A stretch of 63,866 nucleotides of DNA, filler included, from Reticulomyxa filosa (lineage: Eukaryota; Protista; Foraminifera): the NCBI GenBank assembly GCA_000512085.1. It is 23 parts of 23 records of this genome, joined end to end, with 100 filler letters (N's around TTAATTAATTAA, not from the genome) between each part and the next. Parts side by side here need not be neighbours in the genome. Positions count along the whole stretch, not along the records: positions 54,332 to 56,403 come from ASPP01026882.1; 22 more parts are not named here. One strand, written 5' to 3'. Both the position numbers and the translations under genes were made by a program. This document shows positions 54,334-56,699 of this stretch, piece after piece (positions within the stretch are counted from its first letter, which is position 1; each line of letters begins with the position of its first letter). The notes under the pieces were generated by a model. That model was given only the letters and a program-made list of their open reading frames with translations, was not told the DNA's origin and did not search any database.

Positions 54334-55392
54334 GATTCATCAAAAGGTGTATTCATTTCGAATATCGATGTTCAATTCATACACTCAAATCAAACTCCAT
54401 TGTTGCCAACGGTGTTTGCAGTGTATGTCGCTTCGTCAAACGAAAACATGTTTGCAAATGGAGTGCTGGTGCACAATGGAAGCGAGCCAGAGCAAAAGAC
54501 GGCAGTGACCATTGAACCCGCTATTATCAAAGTGAAGGCCTTGGAGTTCCCCCTCTGTTCGAATGCCAATATATGAACTCATGGATTGCTCGCGTGTTGT
54601 TAGAGGAATCTACAAATGCTCTCTTTGTGATCGAAGTAGCCTTCCCGAATCCGTGGTGTATCAATGGTAAAAAAAATAATACACATATATATAAATATGT
54701 ACATATATGTATATGTATACGTATACGTATATATATATATATATGTATATCAAAACAGCCCGAAAAACTCAAGGCATATACTGTGTGAAGCATGTGGGAA
54801 AGAAACACTGAAATTTGATGAAATGGACGGTTTCAGTGTACCTTTGATACGTGATAAACGCTACCCTGTTCGTGTGACCTTGCAATATTACAAGGCCACA
54901 AGCAATGGAGTTGTGACGGATGAAGTAATGACAGAAATCAAAGCTCAGCTTGACAATTCTCAAAAGCAAGCAGATTTCATTGGCTCTTTGGTCACTGATG
55001 GCTTGACTGAAAGACCCACTGATTGGGAGGCCAAAGAAATTGAGAAAATTGCATCAAGTTTATCTTTCAATTGAATTTTTTACATCACTTTTTTTTTAAA
55101 ACAAAAAAAATGTGTATACGTGTATATAGACAGTGACAACGACAAACATGTGAAAGAGGCATTGGTTAATTTGGGATTGTTCAACACTTATTATGAAAGT
55201 TTCAAATCCAATGCAGTTGATGATAAAGCATTGTTGGCTTTGACTGAAAATGATTTGAGTTCATTGTTGCCAAAGATTGGGGATCGTGCCAAATTTCGAC
55301 AATGGTTGGATGAATACAAGATAATGCGCAAACTCTTGGATGAAGAAGAACCTGATACCGATTTTGGAGTGAATGATAACATCTTCTTTTAA
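54334..55392 (+). CDS. Multidomain protein C-terminus: Hint (intein-like) end, Cys-rich Zn-finger, conserved-looking domain, SAM
   Basis: Exons 54334-54666, 54759-55057, 55130-55392. VFAVYVASSNENMFANGVLVHN (ends 54477); YKCSLC..VYQCP..HILCEAC; RDKRYPVRVTLQYYKATSNGVV..ADFIGSLV; SAM LVNLGLFNTYYESFKSNAVDDKALLALTENDLSSLLPKIGDRAKF. One 1-nt frameshift between 54549 and 54572. Confidence 0.75.
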
Positions 55393-56699
55393 CTCCTTTT
55401 TTTAAAAAAAAAATGGTGTAAGCACTTTTGATTGAAGGACAAACTTTACTTTGCAATGTACTTCAAGGCACGTTTGAATGCAATTATTAATTCTAAATTG
55501 AAATGCTTTTTTTGACGCTGTAAAACAGACCGAATGTTTTTTGGCTCATTGATACACTCAAAATGAAATGCTTATCCGTTTATCTCTAATTCGTCGTTAT
55601 TATTGCAAACTTTTACAAACTTTTTCTGATACATCATTACATTAGCACATGATTATCTCAATGAAAATATTACGCAACAAAAATTGTTTCACCTTGATTA
55701 CAGAATGCACAAGATACTGTAAAAATTCTGAGAGTTTTTTTAAAAAATTAATAACATATTAGCTCAGCGCTATTTCGGAACAACAAAACTGTTTGGTACA
55801 GTCATTTAACTACTTTGTCGTAAAGTTGAAGTTAATCTCATTTACTAACAGAACATTGCGGTCAGCAACATAACAAGTGCTTGAATATATCTTCAATCGC
55901 TCAACGAAGAAGGGCAGAACCCAGCCAGAATTCTTTTTTTCCTCCAAATGTTATCTGCAAGTGTTTCTACAAACTCACTATACTCGGAGCAAGTGTATAT
56001 AAATTACTTTGCCTTAGAATGGAATGAAGGTTTGTGTTGTTTACTTTTGTCTCTTTTTAAAAGCAAGCCTTTCACACGTTTATTTTTTAAAATAAAAGTG
56101 ACAACTAAAAAAGGCTATCGACAGATAATTGCAGCTGATACTATCAAAAAGCTAATATTTATAGTTGTCGAATATAAAGATCGTGACTGACCAGAAACAT
56201 TTCATATGAAGCTTCTACTGTAATTAGTAGGGCATTGCACTATAAACGTGTGTACACAGCTCAAAAATTATTTAATTGTTTTTAATATGAACAAATTTCG
56301 TTGCAAATATTAAAAAACTGCAAATTTTTTTTTGCAGCATATCTTGGTCATACTTTTGGCTTCGCAGAATATTTTCCAACGCCCACAGATTTTTAACGTT
56401 TGTNNNNNNNNNNNNNNNNNNNNNNNNNNNNNNNNNNNNNNNNNNNNTTAATTAATTAANNNNNNNNNNNNNNNNNNNNNNNNNNNNNNNNNNNNNNNNN
56501 NNNGAAGATAGTGGAATAATTTGTGTTAAGTTTTCACAATTAAAAAGGAATGAGAAGAAGAGAAAAAGTAATGATGATATTGGTTGTGGTATTAATTTGT
56601 GTTACGGCTCATATAGTGGTTTGATTCGTATTTGGGAATAGTGAACATGTTGTTGGTTGATTTGAATGAAAATGATAATTTTTTTTTATTGAATGAAAA

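What the first reader, a model, noticed from the sequence alone, without database searches (positions are those of the whole stretch)
54334..54490. Hidden intein-like Hint domain ending HN|G, upstream of a Zn-finger / conserved domain / SAM module
Seen: the frame opening at the contig edge (absent from the ORF track) reads ..VFISNIDV..PTVFAVYVASSNENMFANGVLVHN-GSEPE, with His-Asn at 54472-54477. Established: this matches intein/Hint blocks F and G (VYxLxV..NF.ANG.LVHN). Canonical splicing needs Cys/Ser/Thr at +1. Here +1 is Gly, as in bacterial-intein-like (BIL) domains that self-cleave by Asn cyclisation; eukaryotic Hint types include hedgehog and ciliate ubiquitin-flanked BILs. Inference: a self-processing precursor that releases a C-terminal Zn-finger + RDxRYPVRVTLQYYKATSNG domain + SAM polypeptide. 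I recall the RDxRYP domain from uncharacterised protist proteins but have not verified this, and I do not know this architecture as described. Spliceosomal introns in the same gene argue against bacterial contamination.
Basis: partly seen in the sequence, partly recalled or inferred. Interest (0 to 1): 0.85.

Follow-up and report, generated by a model that had tools for sequence, protein, structure and literature searches.

The report
Self-cleaving Hint insert in foraminiferan protein
A freshwater foraminiferan has an intein-like self-cutting domain, kept under strong selection, inside a floppy loop of a widespread protein of unknown function, where it most likely nicks that protein after it is made; this arrangement was not found in other organisms or in the papers searched.

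Summary
The Hint domain is real. The piece is Reticulomyxa filosa contig ASPP01026882.1 (RFI_30690; the annotation misses this exon). The LVHN end passes the TIGR01443 intein C-terminal cut-off. A paralog (RFI_21501/37977) supplies most of the rest: block B TVNH, Pfam Hint above cut-off, Hint fold (TM 0.83), best PDB relative Tetrahymena BIL2. The window's frameshift (single bases missing after 54558 and 54572) is absent from six sister copies, so it is probably an assembly artefact. dN/dS of the Hint end is 0.03-0.08 across three paralog lineages. It is the second half of one roughly 365-residue beta-sandwich domain (pLDDT 94) found in bacteria, protists and giant viruses, and the Hint sits in that domain's disordered loop. 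Cleavage at Asn|Gly would nick the loop, not release a free fragment. About 320 other family sequences lack the Hint; one has ubiquitin in the same loop. It is not a canonical intein (+1 Gly; F4 Ala; F13 Glu/Lys) and works most like a type A BIL. Block A was not found, and activity and expression are untested.

The parts
54334..54477 (+). C-terminal 48 residues of a Hint domain, cut by the contig edge
   Evidence: TIGR01443 above cut-off; 72% identical to P0165, whose twin P0164 passes Pfam Hint; dN/dS 0.03-0.07 against paralogs L005 and L008
54409..54453 (+). Block F equivalent; F4 = Ala (54418-54420), F13 = Glu (54442-54444), where Asp and His are usual
   Evidence: Sequence; alignment to BIL2; usual residues from PMC4031507; numbering is my alignment to the block consensus
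54457..54477 (+). Block G, NGVLVHN, with penultimate His and terminal Asn (54472-54477)
   Evidence: invariant in all copies
54478..54507 (+). +1 Gly, +2 Ser and a short variable spacer (rest of the host loop); predicted cleavage site between 54477 and 54478
   Evidence: HN-GS invariant, spacer variable in length among copies
54508..54537 (+). Host-domain beta-strand that follows the loop (TIEPAIIKVK, family consensus xVExAxI)
   Evidence: Family alignments; strand 279-291 in the host model
54556..54795 (+). ZZ-like Cys-rich finger inserted in the host domain, interrupted by intron 1 and by the frameshift
   Evidence: Same insertion in Hint-less orthologues; PF00569 ZZ weak on Elphidium P0018, E 0.009; not matched by Pfam in the window itself
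54559..54572 (+). Out-of-frame stretch between two single-base gaps; probable assembly-consensus artefact
   Evidence: Open frame in L001, L004, L005, L006, L007, L008; both gaps fall on columns that differ among copies
54667..54758 (+). Intron 1, GT-AG, 92 nt, splits a Cys codon of the finger
   Evidence: same junction in annotated paralog P0165; no transcript evidence
54796..55026 (+). C-terminal part of the conserved host beta-sandwich domain, with RDKRYPVRVTLQYYKATSNG (54850-54909), GSLV and RPTDW
   Evidence: 324 relatives at E<=0.001; host HMM positions 306-386, E 1e-31
55058..55129 (+). Intron 2, GT-AG, 72 nt
   Evidence: same junction in P0016/P0162 annotation
55130..55392 (+). Last exon: SAM-like domain (Pfam match 55150-55296), acidic tail and stop at 55390-55392
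   Evidence: PF00536 E 0.0012, below cut-off; UniRef names the protein SAM domain-containing; SAM passes E 1e-5 in one family member

Best explanation
A domesticated, type A BIL-like Hint domain inserted in the disordered surface loop of a conserved single-domain host protein in one R. filosa paralog clade. Shown: Hint identity, His-Asn end, Gly at +1, block B TxxH in paralogs, strong purifying selection, position just before the post-loop strand, absence from Hint-less orthologues. Inferred: after folding, the terminal Asn cyclises and cuts the Asn|Gly bond; an N-terminal thioester probably forms too (block B kept) and is mostly hydrolysed. The result is a nicked, two-chain host whose halves stay together through the shared beta-sandwich, with a new Gly-Ser N-terminus on the half carrying the finger, the RDxRYP strands and SAM. 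The loop cut would act as a maturation or regulatory switch. Because F4 and F13 are non-canonical, the reaction may be slow or conditional.
For: Hint assignment. Selection: dN/dS 0.03-0.08 for the Hint end and 0.05 for the block B half, as low as or lower than host (0.04-0.22) and SAM (0.13-0.16); Fisher p<1e-8. His-Asn-Gly-Ser invariant. Host is one domain with a low-confidence loop at 241-275; single Ig-like domains align weakly over residues about 30-320, across the loop; 12 of the top 40 covarying pairs cross the loop. Host N-terminal parts lie upstream of the Hint in L001 and L004. Type A BILs end in His-Asn, lack the +1 nucleophile, and cleavage products dominate; F13 His is not required in all inteins (PMC4031507). 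BILs sit in variable regions of their hosts (PMC5874633).
Against: Block A (residue 1) was not found in any copy, so N-terminal chemistry is unverified. F4 = Ala and F13 = Glu or Lys remove two usual helpers. No RNA or read evidence. The N-terminal insertion point is bracketed only between host HMM positions 186 and about 296. The host model is of a Hint-less homologue, not of this protein, and the covariation signal is noisy (about 100 effective sequences).
Confidence: 0.5

Rival explanations
1. The Hint ligates rather than merely cuts. After Asn cyclisation the freed Gly amine attacks the N-terminal thioester and re-joins the host (type A BIL splicing), helped by both ends being held in one folded domain; or a lysine of a partner attacks it, attaching the host N-half to a target as Tetrahymena BIL2 does with ubiquitin.
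For: Block B TVNH kept in two lineages at dS near saturation; invariant Gly at +1; aminolysis mechanism described for type A BILs; BIL2 is the best PDB match and forms isopeptide bonds (PMC8616854); homologue P0141 has a ubiquitin domain ending LRLRGG in the same loop, which would also give an activatable N-half and a Gly-initiated C-half (inference).
Against: Cleavage dominates in tested type A BILs; residue 1 unknown; the ubiquitin insertion is a single metatranscriptome contig out of about 320 sequences; BIL2 similarity is weak (E 5e-4) and BIL2 keeps His at F13.
Confidence: 0.25
2. The C-terminal site is inactive: the domain cuts only at its N-terminus (hedgehog-like), or is a catalytically dead folded insert kept for binding or structure.
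For: F4 Ala and F13 Glu/Lys; the best Pfam score of the paralog is the hedgehog-type Hint module; purifying selection shows use, not catalysis.
Against: His-Asn is invariant with synonymous change at the Asn codon; no sterol-recognition region follows (Pfam match stops at 133 of 213); F13 His is dispensable in some inteins.
Confidence: 0.18
3. This particular locus is a decayed copy: the two single-base gaps are real, so the window's gene makes no full protein. The family-level finding would still hold through intact paralogs.
For: R. filosa holds clearly decayed copies of this gene with internal deletions (L001, L002, L003, L004); no reads were available to check.
Against: L006 starts at the same base, differs in the coding part by only these two gaps, one substitution in the middle exon and one synonymous change in the last exon, and is open; both gaps fall at columns where copies differ (C/G and G/A), as expected if a consensus dropped mixed bases (inference from known pyrosequencing-assembly behaviour, not tested).
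Confidence: 0.15

Closest known systems
Type A bacterial intein-like (BIL) domains, e.g. PDB 2lwy
   Same: Hint fold, about 150 residues, no endonuclease, C-terminal His-Asn, no Cys/Ser/Thr at +1, inserted in a variable region
   Different: Eukaryotic gene with spliceosomal introns; sits in an internal loop of one folded domain rather than between domains; F4 Ala and F13 Glu/Lys; residue 1 unknown
Tetrahymena thermophila BUBL1 BIL2 (PDB 6y75, 6tmm)
   Same: Best solved relative by sequence, E 4.6e-4, sharing TVNH and FANGVLxH; eukaryotic; lacks the +1 nucleophile
   Different: BIL2 is flanked by ubiquitin-like domains and forms isopeptide bonds; here the flanks are halves of an uncharacterised beta-sandwich; BIL2 keeps His at F13
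Class 1 mini-inteins
   Same: Blocks B and G present; Hint-less orthologues of the host exist
   Different: +1 is Gly, the insertion is in a variable loop and not a conserved motif, F4/F13 differ, and the domain is kept across old paralogs and appears to contain an intron
Hedgehog/Hog and VWA-Vint eukaryotic Hint proteins (PMC2362128)
   Same: Eukaryotic, domesticated Hint; Pfam Hint module is the top Pfam hit of the paralog
   Different: No sterol-recognition region, no VWA/Vwaint upstream, internal position, intein-type His-Asn end; Vint profile not hit
Pretoxin HINT (PT-HINT) of polymorphic toxins
   Same: HN end followed by a C-terminal region; weak PF07591 hit, E 3e-5; TM 0.79 to such clusters
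   Different: Below the Pfam cut-off; what follows is the second half of the host's own domain, not a toxin; no secretion or immunity context

Membership tests
Hint superfamily | Profile match to Hint/intein models | tested here: met
   TIGR01443 16.5 vs 15.6 on the window; PF01079 33.1 vs 29.7 on paralog P0164
Hint superfamily | Hint horseshoe fold | tested here: met
   Atlas model of P0165:13-165 has TM 0.79-0.84 to Hint clusters; my single-sequence model of L004 failed, pLDDT 33
Class 1 intein | Cys/Ser/Thr at +1 | tested here: not met
   Gly in all copies
Class 1 intein | Cys/Ser at position 1 (block A) | tested here: inconclusive
   Off the contig or deleted in every copy found
Class 1 intein | Block B Thr-x-x-His | tested here: met
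   TVNH in L004, L007, L008; not on the window's contig
Class 1 intein | Block F Asp/Cys/Trp at F4 and His at F13 | tested here: not met
   Ala and Glu/Lys
Class 1 intein | Insertion in a conserved motif of the host | tested here: not met
   C-terminal junction is in the variable, low-confidence loop
Type A BIL | C-terminal His-Asn without +1 nucleophile | tested here: met
   definition
Type A BIL | Inserted in a non-conserved region of the host | tested here: met
   only the C-terminal junction is seen
Type A BIL | Sequence membership of the BIL-A/PT-HINT family and bacterial host | tested here: not met
   PF07591 24.7 vs 27.7 cut-off; 2lwy only E 0.039; host is a foraminiferan
Type A BIL | Self-cleavage or splicing activity | not testable with these tools
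   Needs expression and mass spectrometry
Ciliate BUBL | Hint flanked by ubiquitin-like domains | tested here: not met
   No ubiquitin hit in P0165, P0164, P0036, P0017 or the window's exons
Hedgehog/Hog | Sterol-recognition region after the Hint | tested here: not met
   PF01079 match covers only 20-133 of 213 and the domain ends in His-Asn followed by host sequence
VWA-Vint | VWA and Vwaint domains upstream; Vint profile | tested here: not met
   Upstream sequence matches the host family HMM; no Vint hit

The most novel reading that the evidence does not exclude
The loop of this uncharacterised family is a processing site that different eukaryotes have fitted with different bond-making modules: ubiquitin in one lineage, a self-activating Hint in R. 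filosa. In R. filosa the Hint would make an ATP-independent thioester on the host's N-half and either re-ligate it to the Gly-initiated C-half or attach it to another protein: a eukaryotic, nucleophile-free splicing or conjugation system inside a single folded domain.
Probability: 0.2. Interest if true: 0.82.

Novelty: new variant of a known kind. Interest (0 to 1): 0.58.

Why it matters
Eukaryotic Hint domains are described mainly as inteins, Hog and Vint proteins and the ciliate BUBL domains. This adds a further type in Rhizaria: a His-Asn|Gly domain with a non-canonical block F, fixed under strong selection inside a loop of one folded host domain. It is a natural test of Asn cyclisation without the usual F4/F13 residues, and of amine-driven ligation when both ends are held together, which is of interest for protein-ligation tools. 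It also draws attention to a large family (hundreds of bacterial genomes, protists, giant viruses) with no Pfam, NCBIfam or PDB match, and suggests its loop tolerates, or uses, cleavable inserts.

Tried and rejected
Pfam on the window's Hint fragment alone: no hit. PDB sequence search with the fragment: only a chance LRR match. Sequencing runs: none listed. Search for block A through the host part of P0036: only itself. Hint relatives in viral contigs, metagenome contigs, phages and plasmids: none; these reach close relatives only. Single-sequence fold of the L004 Hint: unusable. Host family: no Pfam, NCBIfam or PDB sequence match, no significant solved fold (Foldseek best E 0.026, VIA best Z 4.4), no conserved bacterial gene neighbours beyond local synteny, no hit in IMG/VR with one narrow pattern. 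Rfam: none. Literature: no paper with Hint plus Reticulomyxa or foraminifera in the searchable library; the primary BIL papers and the genome paper were not held. Rejected: bacterial contamination (identical to an R. filosa contig, introns, same GC and GC3 as host exons); chance motif; canonical intein; Hog; Vint; BUBL.

Full report
Source and observation. The piece is identical to Reticulomyxa filosa contig ASPP01026882.1, a freshwater foraminiferan. Its annotated gene RFI_30690 (207 residues) starts in intron 1 and misses the exon in question. Frame +3 is open from 54334 and ends the Hint-like stretch with His-Asn at 54472-54477, then Gly-Ser. The 48 residues pass the curated cut-off of TIGR01443, intein C-terminal region (16.5 vs 15.6 bits). 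Pfam does not see the fragment alone.

It is a Hint domain. Searching with the downstream exon returned R. filosa paralogs that reach further upstream. P0164/P0165 (RFI_37977/RFI_21501) hold about 150 residues of the domain: Pfam Hint 33.1 bits against a cut-off of 29.7, Intein_splicing E 4e-7, PT-HINT E 3e-5. The best solved relatives are Tetrahymena BIL2 (E 4.6e-4), then an intein-domain entry, the bacterial BIL 2lwy and hedgehog. The Atlas model of this part matches Hint clusters at TM 0.79-0.84. The window's fragment is 72% identical to P0165. Block B reads TVNH; block G reads NGVLVHN followed by Gly-Ser in every copy. Block F is non-canonical: F4 is Ala and F13 is Glu or Lys, where Asp and His are usual (PMC4031507). 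Block A was not recovered: L007 and L008 start in an apparent intron just after it, L004 has lost it by deletion, and direct searches found nothing.

The frameshift. Against sister contig L006, which starts at the same base, the window lacks one base after 54558 and one after 54572; the other coding differences are two substitutions. All six other copies that cover the site read an open CxxC there, and P0165 is annotated as one chain from Hint through finger and RDKRYP to SAM. Both gaps fall on columns where the copies carry different bases, which fits a consensus that dropped mixed bases; this is inference, since no reads were listed. A true decayed copy is not excluded, because such copies exist in this genome.

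Selection. Three diverged paralog lineages keep the Hint. For its last 45 codons dN/dS is 0.03 (window vs L005) and 0.07 (window vs L008), with synonymous sites saturated between L005 and L008; Fisher tests give p<1e-8. The block B half gives 0.05. Host exons give 0.04-0.22, SAM 0.13-0.16 and the finger 0.3-0.7. The insert is therefore maintained, not decaying.

The host. The RDxRYP motif belongs to a family with 324 representatives at E<=0.001, at least 597 hits in bacterial genomes and close giant-virus members, with no Pfam, NCBIfam or PDB sequence match. A 122-sequence model of a Hint-less member is one compact 365-residue domain (pLDDT 93.6, pTM 0.91) with a single low-confidence loop at about 241-275, between the QVPLK strand and the xVExAxI strand. 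Weak matches to single Ig-like domains span residues about 30-320, across that loop, and 12 of the top 40 covarying pairs join pre-loop to post-loop residues (shallow alignment). In R. filosa, host positions 5-50 and 137-186 lie upstream of the Hint in L001 and L004, and 287-386 downstream; the Hint ends a few residues before the post-loop strand. Foraminiferan-type orthologues, including Elphidium P0018 and R. filosa RFI_03655, have the same inserted finger and SAM-like tail but an ordinary linker. No Hint was found in about 320 other family proteins and loci. The Hint-bearing copies form one supported branch (99/100) on the side of the tree that holds the finger-bearing proteins (75 columns, inner branches mostly unresolved), consistent with one gain. 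One metatranscriptome member has ubiquitin ending LRLRGG in the same loop.

Mechanism. Canonical splicing needs a +1 nucleophile and is excluded. Type A BILs end in His-Asn, lack that nucleophile, can splice by aminolysis, but mostly cleave; F13 His is not needed in all inteins. The most likely working (0.5) is autocatalytic cleavage at Asn|Gly, probably with N-terminal thioester formation and hydrolysis, giving a nicked host whose halves stay together. Ligation, either re-joining through the Gly amine or attachment to a partner lysine as with BIL2 (PMC8616854), is the main rival (0.25). N-terminal-only or no activity follows (0.18), given the block F changes. All chemistry is inferred; none was observed.

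Comparison and novelty. It is a member of the Hint superfamily and works most like a type A BIL, but it fails membership tests for class 1 inteins, BUBL, Hog, Vint (PMC2362128) and, by profile cut-off and host, BIL-A/PT-HINT. No paper in the searchable library links Hint domains to Reticulomyxa or foraminifera; subscription papers were not covered, and automatic Pfam hits on the paralogs exist in databases. Verdict: new variant of a known kind, interest 0.58.

Limits. No expression data; block A unseen; origin of the Hint unknown (nearest feature matches are phage and bacterial clusters, which does not show transfer); host function unknown.

Noticed in passing
L009:3-1355 (P0141; JGI 3300030740): A host-family member with a diverged but complete ubiquitin domain ending LRLRGG inserted in frame in the same loop that holds the Hint in R. 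filosa; the only such case among about 320 sequences.
   Followed up: partly
L001, L002, L003, L004 (R. filosa contigs): Decayed copies of this gene with many internal deletions; in L001 one deletion bounded by a shared GAGTG removes the middle of the host domain and all of the Hint except its last residues. The 3' non-coding region shows deletions too.
   Followed up: partly
L007:1-31 and L008:1-51: Both contigs begin in a T/A tract ending in AG just upstream of the Hint's second strand, which suggests a spliceosomal intron inside the Hint domain just after block A. No transcript confirms it.
   Followed up: partly
L007:655-2212: After the first intron this contig goes into unrelated sequence (a 372-residue low-complexity ORF), whereas L008, nearly identical in the Hint exon, continues into the RDKRYP exon: a mis-join or a rearranged copy.
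   Followed up: no
L008, about 945-960: The otherwise complete paralog changes frame just after EVMAEIK; the annotation bridges it, so this copy also has an indel or sequencing error.
   Followed up: no
Host model of L092:74-1168: The host fold matches uncharacterised giant-virus proteins closely (Marseillevirus LCMAC202 A0A481YYX2, Moumouvirus goulette M1PVX0; E about 1e-45) and, distantly, wsv390-like, baculovirus AcORF17-like and fungal DUF7918 proteins: a large unnamed beta-sandwich superfamily.
   Followed up: partly
P0134, P0110, P0161, P0044, P0145: Other family members carry PB1, CUE, RRM or ZZ domains (eukaryote-like) or signal-peptide-like N-termini (bacteria-like); many polar residues in the core are near-invariant, as in an enzyme or a ligand-binding site.
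   Followed up: no
L011:6004-8634: Two host-family genes in tandem in a cyanobacterial MAG.
   Followed up: no
window 55393-56403: AT-rich 3' region with no match to any fetched protein and no Rfam hit; an 80-residue ORF at 55948-56190 was not searched on its own.
   Followed up: partly
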